From positions 136,429 to 200,428 of the forward strand of contig PDIP01000032.1 of assembly GCA_002811645.1 (NCBI GenBank): DNA of 64,000 nucleotides, written 5' to 3'. A program made the position numbers and the translations under genes. A model generated the notes under the pieces. The model was given only the letters and a program-made list of their open reading frames with translations, was not told the DNA's origin and did not search any database. This stretch comes from Corallochytrium limacisporum Hawaii (lineage: Eukaryota > Protista > Pluriformea). Positions 22,681-56,697 of the stretch are shown here, piece by piece. Position 1 is the first letter of the stretch. Each line of letters starts with the position of its first letter.

Positions 22681-23990
22681 ATGAGCGTAGCAACGGGAAA
22701 TGTATCCACAGCGGTATTCCTCAGAAGCAAGCCCATGGGAGACCTGAGCGAGGTTCCGAATCTAGGTACGCTTGCCGCTCAGTTTGGTAGTAATCTCACT
22801 CTCTCACAGACATCATTCAGCAGTAAGGACTTGATAACCGTTGGTGATGCTTTCACTGACGAGGATTGTGTTACCATCGCAGCAATTATCGAAGAAAATC
22901 GGATGGCCGCCTGCAAGGCCCGATCGCGACCCCGAAACAAAGATTCTTCATGAGCTGCAAAACTTTCCGAACGGGCCTTGATTATGGCTTTAAAAGCACT
23001 GAAGTACGCAAAGATGCTTGATCTCATTCTTGAAAGGAGTAAGTTTCTCGTACACTATCCCGATCTGTCAAATGATTAGAATTGGCTTCATGGGATGCTC
23101 TTCCCTGCAATCGTTTCCAGTGCGGTGACGACGGCGTCCGTGAAGAGCTAAATCCCAACGGTCGCTGTAAACAATTCTCTGTGGCCATACAGGAGCACCG
23201 AGTAAAACTTGCAGTAGCTCTAGCCAAGTCTCGGGTGGCATGGCAGGCGTCAACTATTCAGGATGTGCTGCCTGATGAGTATCAAAACAAGGAGTGCACT
23301 GGTGAGAAACAGTGGAGGTACATCTTGCTAGCGAATCCAATTCCACGAGCGCGCCTTCAAGAGACATTCGAGGCTGATGCGGGTACGTACGTGCCCTGGG
23401 ACGAGTATCAGACCAATGGAGCGCAGTTGCGATCCTGGACAATCGATCCACTGGATTCCCGTTGTCTGGCACTCACTCCCGACCTGGGTCCTGAAATTGA
23501 AACTCTGTCGGTCAACGAATTGACAGTAGCGATACTCGGCGATCGGGACGTGTCTCTGGCGCTTCACGCCCTGCTCAGTCCCCTGCCAGACGGCATGGAT
23601 GGCACTTTTCAAAACGTGCTAATTTATGACGTAGGCAATGGTTCCATCCTTCCCGTGGGCAAGCTTCCTAATCTCAAGTACGCTGTTTACCTCAGCAACT
23701 CTCTGCATAAGGGGGAGACAGAACCAATTGTTCAGATGGTGTTGTCATCATCCGAAAATACGCTTGCACTGCGACCTGTCCTGCCTGGTGTTGATTTTGG
23801 ACAGGAAGACATCACGCAGAATGCACCCCATGTGCCTTGTTCGCCCATAAGCAATGGTTTCTACCTCGCTGATTTCATACCAAAACCTACTGCAGTCTCC
23901 ATCAAAGTGCCACCGTCCACCAAGAAGTTCAGAAAGAAAAAGTCAAAGGTAACGTCCAAGTCGATGGTCAACCTGCAATGGCGATGGTAA
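22681..23990 (+). pseudogene. NSUN7: NSUN7-like putative RNA m5C methyltransferase, disrupted (TGA 22951-22953, TAG 23077-23079, frameshift near 23104-23108)
   Basis: Read through the lesions: FTDEDCVTIAAIIEENR...S*AAKLSERALIMALKALKYAKMLDLILERSKFLVHYPDLSND*NWLHGMLF/[shift]NRFQ...HRVKLAVALAKSRVAWQASTIQDVLPDEYQNKE...GDRDVSLALHAL. This is colinear with remembered NSUN7 motifs (FPDSVYVMAANIFQGIR; YELAFSALKYQDILETIL; VMLYDFQDRKFQ; KIKLAAALARCRIKHDALSIYHILPE; QDKSRSLAVHSV). Pseudogene status is not proven. Confidence 0.75.
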
Positions 23991-24080
23991 TGTGATCAAA
24001 CACCATGAAGCACTTGTTGTCACTGAAGTAGTCTTAGGAAATAAATGTCTATGCTGAAACACTTCGCCTACATCCAAAGC

Positions 24081-25034
24081 TCACTTGCGGGCTGTTGTTA
24101 TTGCAGCTCCCAATTCATTTTCTAACAGCTTTGCCTCAGAGTCTCTTCCACGTTTCTTCAAGTAGCTGGCATACGCGTTCAACAGATCCTCTGCTTCGTT
24201 AGCTTCCTCAAGTGACAGCAACCGTCCTTCATAGACGCCTTTCGCACTGCCATAGTATCCTTCAGTCAAAAGGGAAGAGTCATGGGCCGCATCCGCTCCC
24301 TTTGCGATTGCTGTCAGGATCACTCCAGCAAATGTGGACACGGCTTTCTCGCCGGCTTCGTTCCTCAGTTCGCCCACGGACTCTTCCATGATTTTCCTGT
24401 TCCCATCTAAGACGCTGACGGCTGCTTTCATAACAGTCGCTCCATGCAAGTCCGCGATCTTTGCTATATCGCCCTTTACGGACCCTTCGATGTTCGCCAT
24501 CAGACATGAGCGTGCGACGTGTTCAATCGCTTCTTCGTCCTTGGAGGCTGCCACACTGTCAAACGCTTCCATTGCAGACGCTTGTGATCCCTCCAGCAAA
24601 TCGCAACGGCCGAGCAGTGCTTTACCTAAGGAGGAATGTGTACCGGTTCCGCTCAGAATTCTTCTAACTAGATCATTCTTGTTGCTGCTGCTGGCAAGCA
24701 GTGCTAGATGTTGTTGGGAATCTTTGTCTAGAGCGCCAGACTTGTATAGCTTTGACAGAATGTTGAATGTGGTCTGGTGGTGTCCCTGCTGTGAGGAGAT
24801 TTCGCATCCCACTTTTAGCGCATCTGTCTTGACTGGCATTTCATCCGGCAAGTTTTGCAAAATCTGCATAGCCCGTGTGTATTCTTGCCAAGCGAGGCCA
24901 GGTTTGCCATTCCTAAGTGCTTCATTTGCTGCTGCAATTTCGGGCAAGGTTTCTCCACCTGAGGAGAAGCTCCGCGTCCACAGTCGCCGTGATGCTGGAC
25001 AACCGCGGCTGCTGAATGCTCGAAGTCCCAGCAT
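24081..25034 (-). CDS. Uncharacterised alpha-helical (TPR-like) protein with probable mitochondrial presequence
   Basis: 317 aa ORF from ATG. N-terminus MLGLRAFSSRG...RRLWTRSFSS is presequence-like, followed by Ala/Leu-rich helical repeats. Confidence 0.75.
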   Translation of the reverse strand: MLGLRAFSSRGCPASRRLWTRSFSSGGETLPEIAAANEALRNGKPGLAWQEYTRAMQILQNLPDEMPVKTDALKVGCEISSQQGHHQTTFNILSKLYKSGALDKDSQQHLALLASSSNKNDLVRRILSGTGTHSSLGKALLGRCDLLEGSQASAMEAFDSVAASKDEEAIEHVARSCLMANIEGSVKGDIAKIADLHGATVMKAAVSVLDGNRKIMEESVGELRNEAGEKAVSTFAGVILTAIAKGADAAHDSSLLTEGYYGSAKGVYEGRLLSLEEANEAEDLLNAYASYLKKRGRDSEAKLLENELGAAITTARK

Positions 25035-25481
25035 ACTGTTCCTTGGTCACCATTCGTCTACGAGAGCATGCTGACGTTAGAAGAGCGATGTTTCGTGTTC
25101 CAACGCTGTCCCAAAGTAGTTGTCTTGTGAGCTCAGCCGTGACGCAACTCTTGAGGGCTGAGTGGAGAAATTCCAGTGGAGAGTCTCACCAGAACAGGAG
25201 CACAGGAGGAGCAGGGAGGGACACCCCCACCCCCTCTCCCTCCCTCCCTCGAAAGAGGGGGGTGCGCTATGCAAAGTAGCTGGTTTCTCGATGGCCTGGT
25301 CTAATTTGGTGACCCGCGCTGCACATGTTCTAAGCCATTGCCTACGGTACTGTGCAGTAGGTTATGAAGACGACCTTTTCTTCTTGGTACTTGGGCTCTG
25401 CATGAAGAAATAATTCACTGACTGGGACACAGAATCTTCATAAATACTTTCTAAATTGTAGATATTACAATTCAGAACACT

Positions 25482-26384
25482 ATGTCTAGACAAGATCAGT
25501 TCGACGGTATGCTGCTTGCAGTTGCCCAGCAGACCAGTGGCATTGATGAGCTTTTGGACGTGTTCTTTGGTTTCCTCGATCGTAAGACCGACTTCTATAG
25601 CAATCCACAGCAAGACCCAAAGGCTGCTGTGGACCGGGTATTCAAGAGGTACTGCAAGGCCAAGCAGTCGGTGCCTTCGAAGTCTACGCCGGCGAGCATC
25701 CAAGAGATCAAGGAAGAGAGGCCAGCAGAGGATGTGATGCAGACAATTGAAGCAGAGAGAAAGAAACAGGAAGAGTTGGTTGCTGCTGCGACTGCGAAAA
25801 AGACCGAGGGACCCAAGGACAGTGGGGAGACGAAGGAGGAAGATGGTCCGGAAGAGGGCAAACAGATGCCTAATGTTGGCAACGGTGGCTTTGCCGACAA
25901 TTACATTTGGTCACAGACTTTGGCTGACGTGGAAATTCGTCTACCCACTCAGATAGATGCCCGACTGAAGGGTCGTGACATTGTTGTGGACATCGGACGG
26001 CGCAAATTGAAGGTGGCTATCAAGAACGGCAAGACCCTTGTTGATGGTGAGCTGTACAACGAAGTGAAGGCAGATGAAAGCTTTTGGACACTGGAAGATG
26101 GCAAGACCATTGTAGTGCAGTTGAACAAAATTAACGCCATGGAGTGGTGGGAATCTATTGTGAAAGGTGGTCCTGCCATTGATACCAAGAAAGTGGAGCC
26201 GGAGAACAGCAACCTCAGTGACCTAGACGGAGACACTCGGCAAATGGTGGAGAAGATGATGTATGATCAGCGACAAAAGCAGATGGGTTTGCCCACAAGT
26301 GATGAGCAGAAGAAGCAGGATATGCTCAACAAATTCATGGCGCAGCATCCAGAAATGGACTTCAGCAATGCAAAGATTCAGTAA
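25482..26384 (+). CDS. NUDC: Nuclear distribution protein NudC
   Basis: FDGMLLAVAQQ...FFGFLDRKTDF N-terminus, PNVGNGG/YIWSQTL CS (p23) domain, LSDLDGDTRQMVEKMMYDQRQK...HPEMDFSNAK C-terminus. Confidence 0.97.
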   Translation: MSRQDQFDGMLLAVAQQTSGIDELLDVFFGFLDRKTDFYSNPQQDPKAAVDRVFKRYCKAKQSVPSKSTPASIQEIKEERPAEDVMQTIEAERKKQEELVAAATAKKTEGPKDSGETKEEDGPEEGKQMPNVGNGGFADNYIWSQTLADVEIRLPTQIDARLKGRDIVVDIGRRKLKVAIKNGKTLVDGELYNEVKADESFWTLEDGKTIVVQLNKINAMEWWESIVKGGPAIDTKKVEPENSNLSDLDGDTRQMVEKMMYDQRQKQMGLPTSDEQKKQDMLNKFMAQHPEMDFSNAKIQ

Positions 26385-27174
26385 TCAAGCTGTGTTTCTT
26401 ACGAGATTTGTGCATGATTAAATCAACTCTTTCCTGTAATAAAGAAGATCCCGGGAGTTCAACAGGTTTGTCTTTCATGGCGGGCTTTGCGGTTTCGTCT
26501 CTCGCTTTAGGATCGGCCATCGCGGCTTCGATCTGCTTTTTTCGCTCTTCTCTTTGTTTCGTTTCCCTCTCTTTCCGGATCTTAATGTCACTCTTAACAC
26601 GGTCATTCAACTCATCATAGTGGCATACGCTTTAATCGATGAGCCACCTGAGCCCTTCTTCAATCGCATCATCAAGGCCCTCCGTGCCTTTTGCCTGACA
26701 AGAGACTATCTTTGGACACTTTTCATCTCCAATAAACCGGGACACAAGCGTTGCGTCTTGCTCGTTAGCAATGAGATCTCTCTTGTTTCCAAGGAGTAGC
26801 AATGGCTTTCCCTTCACATGCTCATTCTCAAGGACTCCAGCCAGAACCTCTCGTGACCCCGCAAACTTTTGCTCATCTGTAAGATCAAACACTTAGATAA
26901 CACCATGTACATCTGGTGTGTAGTTTGACCAGATATGAGGTATCCTTGTACCACCACCAACGTCGTATATTGTGACCTGTATGTCTCCCATTTGAAACAC
27001 TTCCCGATTCAACCCGACCGTTGGGACAATATAGTCAACAGGTTGACCTTGAATTGCACTGACAACAGTCGATTTTCCAGCATTATCTAGACCAAGTACC
27101 ACGTATGTAAGGCCTCAAAACTGAGCGTCTGCATCCTGCTTGACTTGTAAGTTGCTTGAGCACCTGCAGCCCAT
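26362..27174 (-). pseudogene. ARL13B: Ciliary small GTPase ARL13B with three in-frame stop codons (TGA 27117-27115, TAA 26895-26893, TAA 26634-26632)
   Basis: Three ORF-track fragments plus the N-terminus lie in one frame from ATG 27174: MGCRCSS...QF*GLTYVVLGLDNAGKS...PTVG...DVGGGTRIPHIWSNY...GVI*VFD...GKPLLLLGNKRD...IEEGLRWLID*SVCHYDELNDRV, then a coiled coil. DxGGG (Gly in place of the catalytic Gln) and the post-GTPase coiled coil are ARL13 hallmarks. Pseudogene versus recoded gene is unresolved. Confidence 0.88.
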
Positions 27175-28166: not shown

Positions 28167-28559
28167 ATGGCGATCTTATTGACCAGAGTCTACTGCACAA
28201 TAGAAACTTGCCGCGAATCTAGTGCAATGACAAGCAACGGTACAGAACAGCCCAAGGACAGTGGGCAGAAGGCTGAGTCTTCAAGCTCCCGCAAGCGCCG
28301 TTCCGTAAAGAACAGAGAACAGCATAATCGTCTGGAAAAATATCGTCGGGCTCATCTGAAAGCCTGCTTCGAAGAACTTAAAGAAACGATCCCGAGCATT
28401 CAGGACAGCAAAGCATCTACTGTGGCCATCCTCCAGCATGCCACGAAGTACACAGGGGCACTGAACCAGCATTACGAGCAAACTATAATTAGGATTGCTA
28501 AGCTACGATATATTAATGAATGGTGCAAGCAGCAAATGGCTGAAATTGAGGGTAAATAA
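28167..28559 (+). CDS. Mnt/Mxd(Mad)-like bHLH-leucine zipper transcription factor (Myc/Max network)
   Basis: REQHNRLEKYRRAHLKACFEELKETIP...STVAILQHATKY followed by a zipper, close to MNT HNKLEKNRRAHLKECFETLK. Alternative start at ATG 28227. Confidence 0.85.
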   Translation: MAILLTRVYCTIETCRESSAMTSNGTEQPKDSGQKAESSSSRKRRSVKNREQHNRLEKYRRAHLKACFEELKETIPSIQDSKASTVAILQHATKYTGALNQHYEQTIIRIAKLRYINEWCKQQMAEIEGK

Positions 28560-55690: not shown

Positions 55691-56697
55691 ATGGGTGAGC
55701 GTGAGGACAATGTCTACATGGCTAAGCTGGCCGAGCAGGCTGAGCGCTATGACGGTAAGTAACAAGAGTCGCAATCAGACGTACATCGGGCGATCCGCAC
55801 CGTACAAAATGGTTCATCCATCCATCCATCCGGTTAATAAGCTTATACAATAGCTTATTTGATGATTTTTGGGTCGAGGTGATCATGATGGCGTGTACGG
55901 TGATGGGAGGCCGATGTCGAAATCAGGATTTGGATCGTTGCGGACAGAATCGCTAACATTCTTTGTATTTTCTTTTAATTTTATTTACAGAAATGGTTGA
56001 CGCCATGAAGAAGGTCGCCAACCTGGACACTGAGCTCACCGTTGAGGAGCGCAACCTGCTGTCCGTCGCTTACAAGAACGTCATTGGCGCCCGCCGTGCC
56101 TCTTGGCGTATCATTTCCTCAATTGAGCAGAAGGAGGAGTCCAAGGGTTCTGACAAGAAGCTGGAGATGATCAAGGCCTACCGCACCAAGGTCGAGAACG
56201 AGCTGAAGGACATTTGCTCCGACATCCTTTCTGTCCTGGACCAGCATCTGATCCCCGCGGCCACCTCTGGCGAGAGCAAGGTCTTCTACTACAAGATGAA
56301 GGGTGACTACCACCGTTACTTGGCTGAGTTCGCCCAGGGTAAGGACCGCCAGGAGGCTGCCGAGAACTCTCTCGTCGCCTACAAGGCTGCTTCTGACATT
56401 GCCCTGACTGAGCTGCCTCCTACCCACCCCATTCGTCTGGGTCTGGCCCTCAACTTCTCTGTCTTCTACTACGAGATTCTCAACTCTCCTGACCGCGCAT
56501 GCCATCTGGCTAAGCAGGCCTTCGATGATGCCATCGCTGAGCTCGACACTCTGTCCGAGGAGAGCTACAAGGACTCAACACTGATCATGCAGCTGCTGCG
56601 TGACAACCTGACTCTGTGGACCTCTGATATGCAGGGAGATGAGGGCGAAGGCGGCAAGGACGAAGGCAAGGACGAGGGCGAAGAGGATGGCAACTAA
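55691..56697 (+). CDS. YWHAE: 14-3-3 protein, epsilon type; exons 55691-55754 and 55991-56697
   Basis: Exon 1 [21 protein letters not shown] joins exon 2 (E)MVDAMKKV...[25 protein letters not shown]...[19 protein letters not shown]. Confidence 0.98.
55755..55990 (+). other. U2-type spliceosomal intron (236 nt, phase 1)
   Basis: GTAAGT donor, GCTAAC branch point at 55952-55957, T-rich tract, ACAG acceptor. Splicing restores the conserved ERYDEMV. Confidence 0.95.

What the first reader, a model, noticed from the sequence alone, without database searches (positions are those of the whole stretch)
22681..27174. Only the cilium/flagellum-associated genes are broken: flagellar-toolkit decay in progress, or stage-specific recoding
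Seen: of about 25 recognisable genes, 23 have clean frames, including ORFs of ~1200 and ~1880 codons. Two carry premature stops. Known: ARL13B is a ciliary membrane GTPase largely restricted to ciliated eukaryotes, and NSUN7 is needed for sperm flagellar motility in mouse. The two genes are separated by two intact genes, so this is not a local deletion or a badly assembled patch. Inference A: selection on the flagellum was released recently and the toolkit is decaying, so counting BLAST hits would falsely suggest a cryptic flagellated stage. This matters if the organism is Corallochytrium, where flagellar genes have been reported but no flagellum seen. Inference B: the stops are a switch, removed by RNA editing or readthrough only in a rare flagellated or sexual stage, as with A-to-I correction of premature stops in the Sordariomycete sexual cycle.
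Basis: partly seen in the sequence, partly recalled or inferred. Interest (0 to 1): 0.9.

Follow-up and report, generated by a model that had tools for sequence, protein, structure and literature searches.

The report
Cilium genes decaying, IFT-A coat kept
In Corallochytrium, a single-celled relative of animals thought to hide a flagellated stage, most cilium genes checked are broken or missing, yet five subunits of one transport complex (IFT-A) remain intact, which points to a job outside the cilium.

Summary
The lesions are real. ARL13 has three in-frame stops; the NSUN5/7-family gene has two stops and a frameshift. All six are in both DNA runs and, unedited and unspliced, in a probable RNA run. 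A second, ~1% diverged isolate shares five, has Glu at the sixth, and carries two deletions of its own. That is decay, not recoding. The organism is Corallochytrium limacisporum (EukProt 'Clim' names). Genome-wide, ARL3, ARL6, kinesin-2, B9D1, B9D2, IFT57 and IFT46 are also broken; axonemal dyneins, dynein-2, IFT172, BBS1/5 and RSP3 were not detected; 0 of 65 non-ciliary controls are broken. Not all ciliary genes decay: centriole genes (SAS-6, delta/epsilon tubulin) and five IFT-A subunits (7,388 codons, no lesion, about 54 expected) are open. So the published 'cryptic flagellated stage' most likely rests on fossils, while IFT-A is kept without IFT-B or either IFT motor. The public NSUN7-like model hides its lesions behind a 41-nt intron that neither RNA assembly splices. 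NSUN7 orthology itself is untested. Other first readers of this scan noted the same pattern on other contigs; I found no paper reporting it.

The parts
22681..23990 (+). NSUN5/NSUN7-family (probable NSUN7) pseudogene, about 436 codons when read with X at the breaks; about 90 residues of the methyltransferase core missing against the NSUN5 profile
   Evidence: HMM of 120 NSUN5 homologues scores the X-read-through at 31.7 bits, best of 2000 shuffles 3.1; a separate intact NSUN5 orthologue lies on C88
22951..22953 (+). premature TGA, shared by both isolates
23077..23079 (+). premature TAG, shared by both isolates
23089..23090 (+). frameshift (best placement), shared by both isolates
   Evidence: best score with the break at 23088; one search lists no indel here in X3 or X4
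23039..23079 (+). 41-nt GT..AG stretch used as an intron by the public model Clim_evm54s149; not spliced in either RNA assembly, lacks the CTAAC branch point seen in real introns here, and encodes conserved NSUN N-terminal sequence
   Evidence: 12.4 bits unspliced against 5.4 for the model
23444..23614 (+). 171-bp in-frame deletion private to isolate X4; ends not GT-AG on either strand
   Evidence: table 5
24081..25034 (-). intact 317-aa gene, family not identified (local control)
25482..26384 (+). intact NudC gene (local control)
   Evidence: Pfam Nudc_N and CS
26362..27174 (-). ARL13 unitary pseudogene: G domain plus coiled coil; region covered by RNA-like contigs up to 27223/27225
   Evidence: both G-domain pieces hit Chlamydomonas ARL13 (4m9q, 5di3_B) best and collinearly; no intact ARL13 among Arf matches
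27115..27117 (-). premature TGA before the P-loop, shared by both isolates
26893..26895 (-). premature TAA at the F/Y column of the Arf beta-4 strand, shared by both isolates
26632..26634 (-). premature TAA private to this isolate; GAA (Glu) in X4
   Evidence: (26634 A>C on the plus strand)
26537..26538 (-). 2-nt deletion in the ARL13 coiled-coil tail, private to isolate X4
   Evidence: table 4

Best explanation
C. limacisporum lost its cilium recently and genes used only in the cilium are decaying neutrally by point mutation and deletion. ARL13 and the NSUN7-like gene are two such fossils, still transcribed. SHOWN: lesions in DNA and RNA-like contigs, different lesions in two isolates, eight broken cilium-only genes against no broken controls, intact centriole genes and five intact IFT-A genes. 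INFERRED: the loss is young (about 0.02-0.09 substitutions per site from stop counts, a lower bound); centriole genes stay because the centriole organises mitosis; IFT-A stays because it does a job outside the cilium, most likely as a motor-independent, coatomer-like membrane coat or adaptor in vesicle traffic or at the centriole (about 0.6 for that role).
For:: no RNA-DNA difference at any stop in X3; X4 shares five lesions, has GAA at the sixth and adds two deletions. ARL13 dN/dS between isolates 0.91 on 10 changes; SNP density 1.2-1.3% in the two fossils against 0.2% and 0.55% in the intact neighbours. Broken elsewhere: ARL6, ARL3, kinesin-2, B9D1 and B9D2, IFT57, IFT46. Only dynein-1 found with three dynein domains. 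Controls 0 of 65; Fisher P about 7e-11, or 1e-7 with the six open ciliary genes counted. Open frames: IFT121 1463, IFT122 1189, IFT139 1638, IFT140 1240, IFT144 1858 codons, about 54 lesions expected at the fossil rate. SAS-6, delta and epsilon tubulin open; centrioles seen by EM (PMC11153136).
Against: Only contigs of culture-stage runs were laid, so rare edited or spliced transcripts cannot be excluded. The NSUN7-like gene shows dN/dS 0.27 between isolates (9 synonymous, 6 non-synonymous; P about 0.01) and its lesions cluster in 50 codons before a 300-codon open frame. Lesions outside the window were not checked against reads. 'Not detected' includes remnants too decayed for the HMM search. 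Selection on IFT-A rests on open frames only; dN/dS was not measured. The intact Tubby protein shows no obvious IFT-A-binding N-terminus by eye, and a second Tubby copy is a fragment.
Confidence: 0.9

Rival explanations
1. The stops are a switch removed by A-to-I editing or readthrough in a rare flagellated or sexual stage.
For: ARL13 has stops only in this isolate; both B9D2 stops are TAG at positions that are Trp in the human protein (Trp from memory); the fossils are transcribed.
Against: Editing cannot repair the frameshifts and deletions in the NSUN7-like gene, ARL3, ARL6, kinesin-2, B9D2, IFT57 and IFT46. One ARL13 stop is Glu in X4 and another sits at an F/Y column. RNA contigs are unedited. 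TAA, TGA and TAG all end long genes normally (18/13/6). Axonemal dyneins and dynein-2 were not found.
Confidence: 0.02
2. The NSUN7-like locus still makes a shortened protein (ATG 22984, 41-nt intron spliced out, 321 aa), so only ARL13 is a true fossil in this window.
For: GTAAGT donor and TAG acceptor restore the frame exactly; public model P0001; dN/dS 0.24-0.27 between isolates and an in-frame deletion in X4.
Against: No splice joint in X3 or X4 contigs; no CTAAC branch point; the 'intron' encodes conserved residues; X4 lacks 57 codons of the model; the methyltransferase core is already incomplete.
Confidence: 0.12
3. IFT-A is also released from selection and simply has not been hit yet, or was released later than IFT-B.
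For: IFT-A proteins are divergent (IFT144 about 29% identical to homologues, N-half barely alignable); IFT140 lacks the C-terminal part of its TPR domain; IFT43 not detected.
Against: No lesion in 7,388 codons has P about 5e-24 at the fossil rate and 0.005 at a tenth of it. Long insertions kept in frame imply selection for the reading frame over a long time.
Confidence: 0.08
4. Assembly or sequencing artefact.
For: X1 and X2 may be the source of the assembly.
Against: X3 and X4 come from other studies and carry the same lesions; 65 control genes are clean.
Confidence: 0.01

Closest known systems
Decay of flagellar genes in the downy mildew Hyaloperonospora arabidopsidis (PMC3471859)
   Same: Flagellum lost; remnants with indels and deletions left in the genome; local compaction.
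   Different: There 211 of 257 genes are gone and 37 remnants average 57% identity and 42% of gene length. Here many fossils are near full length, transcribed, and still differ between isolates. Centrioles and five IFT-A genes are kept.
Sanchytrids, unfinished flagellum loss (PMC8371127)
   Same: Intermediate state of loss; axonemal dyneins missing.
   Different: Sanchytrids lost all IFT-A, kept part of IFT-B, and lost delta and epsilon tubulin. Corallochytrium shows the reverse on each point.
Partial IFT losses in Thalassiosira, Toxoplasma/Neospora and Plasmodium (PMC5850483)
   Same: IFT modules are lost as blocks. Toxoplasma and Neospora lost several IFT-B components.
   Different: Those species still build gamete flagella with motors. 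Here both IFT motors, transition-zone B9 genes and ARL3/6/13 are dead or undetected while IFT-A persists.
Cryptic flagellate stage proposed for C. limacisporum (Torruella et al. 2015, as cited in PMC7147346 and PMC12731214)
   Same: Same organism; homologues of flagellar genes are indeed present and transcribed.
   Different: Many of those homologues cannot encode full-length protein, so the inference from presence is not supported. The 2015 paper itself could not be read.
A-to-I repair of premature stops in Sordariomycete sexual stages (from memory)
   Same: Premature stops inside conserved genes; two TAG at Trp columns in B9D2.
   Different: Those are stop-only, Trp-restorable and conserved between species. 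Here frameshifts, deletions and isolate-private lesions are common.

Membership tests
ARL13 GTPase | Best sequence match to ARL13 over other Arf/Arl proteins | tested here: met
   Both pieces rank 4m9q/5di3_B first (E 2e-13, 4e-6), collinear across the stop
ARL13 GTPase | Gly in place of the switch-II Gln; coiled coil after the G domain | tested here: met
   DVGGG motif and charged helical tail read directly in the translation; diagnostic value from established knowledge; no coiled-coil predictor run
ARL13 GTPase | Monophyly with ARL13 in a tree | not tested
   No set of ARL13 sequences was on hand; broken genes cannot be searched whole by reference
NSUN5/NSUN7 family | N-terminal domain plus C-terminal methyltransferase strands | tested here: met
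   31.7 bits against best shuffle 3.1; Pfam NSUN5_N E 0.07 on the 41-aa piece
NSUN7 orthologue | Closer to NSUN7 than to NSUN5 | tested here: inconclusive
   No NSUN7 retrieved. Indirect: an intact NSUN5 orthologue exists elsewhere; resemblance to human NSUN7 is from memory only
Unitary pseudogene | Disabling lesions fixed in DNA and present in RNA | tested here: met
   (contigs, not raw reads)
Unitary pseudogene | No intact copy elsewhere | tested here: met
   Met for ARL13; for the NSUN gene only one other NSUN5_N match, the NSUN5 orthologue, from a search that missed this locus itself
Unitary pseudogene | dN/dS near 1 | tested here: inconclusive
   ARL13 0.91 on 10 changes; NSUN7-like 0.27 on 15 changes
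Editing-repaired premature stops | Stop-only lesions at Trp columns, conserved between isolates | tested here: not met
Editing-repaired premature stops | A-to-G RNA-DNA difference in a specific stage | tested here: inconclusive
   None in culture-stage contigs; other stages not available
IFT-A complex | Six subunits 43/121/122/139/140/144 encoded | tested here: inconclusive
   Five found in long open frames; IFT43 not detected
IFT-A complex | Subunits assemble into one complex | not testable with these tools
   Needs pull-down or imaging

The most novel reading that the evidence does not exclude
C. limacisporum is a non-ciliated eukaryote that keeps an almost complete IFT-A complex under selection after losing IFT-B, kinesin-2, dynein-2, the BBSome and the transition zone: IFT-A working alone as a non-ciliary, coatomer-like coat or centriolar scaffold, in a species that can be stably transfected.
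Probability: 0.65. Interest if true: 0.87.

Novelty: new variant of a known kind. Interest (0 to 1): 0.78.

Why it matters
It undercuts a repeatedly cited inference (a cryptic flagellated stage in a key close relative of animals) and shows how gene models and homology counts can report fossils as working genes. Because the loss is recent, broken versus intact sorts genes into cilium-only and multi-use classes: a genome-wide list of pseudogenes would be a natural screen for ciliary genes, and the NSUN7-like gene falls provisionally on the ciliary side. The intact IFT-A set makes an old question, whether IFT-A has a function outside cilia, directly testable with no cilium to confound it; stable transfection is published for both strains (10.1101/2020.11.12.379420).

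Tried and rejected
Hidden introns: the only candidate (41 nt, 23039-23079) is unspliced in RNA contigs and removes conserved residues; no GT-AG pair with a consensus donor spans the TGA at 22951 or the ARL13 stops. Changed genetic code: all three stops end normal genes. C182, a second dynein-domain hit, is midasin. C47, an Arf hit with stops, is ARF6 with ordinary introns. NSUN7 homologues were not retrieved by five routes. HMM searches for BBS5, BBS1, IFT81, IFT43, DRC1/2 and RSP3 found nothing; other readers report remnants of IFT81 and DRC2, so these blanks do not show deletion. Torruella 2015 and van Dam 2013 are not held. Broken genes were searched piece by piece by reference; the joined NSUN reading was built only inside a script, with X at the breaks, and was not sent to remote searches. 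Coding-model scores of IFT140 and IFT144 are inflated because they were in the training set and were not used.
Full report
OBSERVATION. Translation of the region confirms two broken genes around two intact ones. On the minus strand, 27174-26362 reads as an Arf-like GTPase with a coiled-coil tail and three in-frame stops (TGA 27117-27115, TAA 26895-26893, TAA 26634-26632). Both G-domain pieces match Chlamydomonas ARL13 best, and the middle stop takes exactly one codon in the alignment. On the plus strand, 22681-23990 has TGA 22951, TAG 23077 and a frameshift at about 23089-23090. An HMM built from 120 NSUN5 homologues scores the reading with X at the breaks at 31.7 bits against 3.1 for the best of 2000 shuffles. 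An intact NSUN5 orthologue exists on another contig, so this is a paralogue. NSUN7 is the likely name, but no NSUN7 sequence could be retrieved, so orthology is untested. The other roughly 23 genes of the window have clean frames.

ORGANISM. Proteins of this genome carry EukProt names of the form Clim_evm, and Clim is the abbreviation for Corallochytrium limacisporum (PMC11153136). The 24.1-Mb, nearly intron-free genome makes open-frame tests informative.

READS. Four runs were laid as contigs. DNA runs X1 and X2 are identical to the window but may be its source. X3, a probable RNA run from another study, is identical at every lesion, with no editing and no splice. Its contigs stop in the intergenic gaps (25120-25456 and beyond 27223), as RNA would. 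X4, a third study, differs at 35 positions, which fits the second known strain (India and Hawaii, 10.1101/2020.11.12.379420; the assignment is inferred). X4 shares five of the six lesions. It has GAA (Glu) at the third ARL13 stop, and adds a 2-nt deletion at 26537 and a 171-bp deletion at 23444-23614 whose ends are not splice sites. Different isolates breaking the same genes in different places is what neutral decay gives. ARL13 has dN/dS 0.91 on ten changes. The NSUN7-like gene has 0.27 on fifteen (P about 0.01), which I cannot explain fully. Contigs drop rare forms and cannot show strand, so ARL13 coverage could be read-through from the convergent NudC.

THE 41-NT 'INTRON'. The public model Clim_evm54s149 (321 aa) starts after the TGA and removes the TAG and the frameshift with a 41-nt intron. 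Neither RNA assembly splices it. It lacks the CTAAC branch point of the ARF6 and 14-3-3 introns, and it encodes residues that match the family profile (12.4 bits unspliced against 5.4). It is most likely an annotation patch over a pseudogene, with a 0.12 chance of a minor rescued product.

GENOME-WIDE CENSUS. Broken: ARL6 (about 40 codons including most of the P-loop region deleted, with frameshift), ARL3 (truncated, stops and frameshift; 33, 87), the only kinesin-2 found (frameshift, TAG, about 190 codons deleted; 20, 23, 78), B9D1 (TAG) and B9D2 (two TAG and a frameshift; 28, 33), IFT57 (frameshift; 41, 48), IFT46 (N-terminal part lost or shattered; 55, 68). Not detected: any dynein heavy chain other than dynein-1, with three different domains (10, 19, 65, 26), IFT172 (21), BBS1, BBS5, IFT81, IFT43, DRC1/2, RSP3 (75, 27, 74, 63, 61, 89). 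Intact controls: 39 DEAD-family genes, 9 non-ciliary Arf-family genes, 12 kinesins, alpha/beta/gamma tubulin, dynein-1 and midasin, 0 of 65 broken (12, 13, 20, 62; Fisher P 7e-11, or 1e-7 counting the open ciliary genes). Names of control paralogues, B9D1/B9D2, delta/epsilon tubulin and PACRGL were assigned by reading the translations. These lesions were not checked against reads, and the gene set was chosen by me, not sampled at random.

WHAT IS KEPT. SAS-6 and delta and epsilon tubulin are open, which fits the centrioles seen by EM in this species (PMC11153136). A PACRG-like gene is open. Five IFT-A subunits lie in long open frames: IFT121 1463, IFT122 1189, IFT139 1638, IFT140 1240 and IFT144 1858 codons. 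IFT121 and IFT139 rest on one Pfam domain and the frame length only. At the lesion rate of the fossils about 54 hits are expected in these 7,388 codons and none is seen. IFT144 is only about 29% identical to its homologues, with long in-frame insertions, and IFT140 ends half-way through its TPR domain. One Tubby-domain gene is open and a second is a fragment.

MECHANISM. Shown: lesions, their spread between isolates, and the split between modules. Inferred: an ancestor stopped building a cilium; genes with only a ciliary role were released and now collect stops and deletions. Stop counts suggest about 0.045 substitutions per site (0.02-0.09) since release, a few times the distance between the isolates; this is crude and a lower bound because older fossils escape detection. 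The absence of detectable axonemal dyneins suggests that motility went earlier or that long genes are deleted fast. Without IFT-B, kinesin-2 and dynein-2, IFT-A cannot run as a train. Its persistence therefore means another job. I consider a motor-independent coat or adaptor on membranes or at the centriole most likely (about 0.6), from the coatomer-like architecture of IFT-A (established knowledge) and from cilium-independent IFT-A roles reported in Drosophila (cited in PMC7536321). No evidence here localises it.

RECODING. A-to-I editing turns any stop into Trp. One ARL13 stop is Glu in the other isolate, another sits where Arf paralogues of this genome have Phe or Tyr, and seven of the nine broken genes have frameshifts or deletions in this assembly that editing or readthrough cannot mend. 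All three stop codons end normal genes. The two TAG codons at Trp columns of B9D2 are simply the commonest nonsense change, and that gene is also frameshifted. Probability 0.02.

COMPARISON AND NOVELTY. Flagellar gene decay is known from Hyaloperonospora (PMC3471859) and partial loss from sanchytrids (PMC8371127), Thalassiosira and apicomplexans (PMC5850483). In the sanchytrid and diatom cases IFT-A goes and IFT-B lingers, the reverse of this genome. The literature I could read still cites a cryptic flagellated stage or a near-complete toolkit for Corallochytrium (PMC7147346, PMC12731214), and searches found no paper on pseudogenes or IFT-A retention in it; the library lacks most subscription papers, including Torruella 2015. 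Other first readers of this scan noted the same pattern on other contigs; I used those as leads only, and most of my census preceded them. Verdict: a real feature, a new variant of a known kind, interest 0.78.

Noticed in passing
G000 kinesin search (loci L040-L054): None of the 12 intact kinesins read to me as a conventional kinesin-1; L049 is unassigned and L051 is a very divergent motor without a GKT P-loop.
   Followed up: no
window 26362-26384: The ARL13 frame ends inside the last 23 nt of the convergent NudC coding sequence, so the true ARL13 C-terminus was probably deleted or truncated.
   Followed up: partly
G000:C88:255259-255492 and L067: The IFT46 remnant lies tail to tail with the intact NSUN5 gene, about 23 kb from the intact IFT122 gene.
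   Followed up: partly
L065 (G000:C272:24781-24876): Fragmented second Tubby-domain gene; may be the true TULP3-like ciliary adaptor.
   Followed up: partly
L060:171-3881 minus: IFT140 is open for 1237 codons but stops at about position 275 of the 486-position TPR model.
   Followed up: partly
window 22681-23990: Excess of synonymous changes between isolates (9 of 15) in a gene with shared disabling lesions; unexplained.
   Followed up: partly
window 28167-28559: Short 130-aa bHLH gene (Pfam HLH), Mad/Mnt-like by eye.
   Followed up: no
window 24081-25034 minus: Intact 317-aa protein with a mitochondrial-type N-terminus by eye and no Pfam family; singleton cluster.
   Followed up: no
L011 (G000:C47): ARF6 keeps three ordinary introns with CTAAC branch points in an almost intron-free genome; 14-3-3 in the window (about 55755-55990) keeps one.
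   Followed up: no
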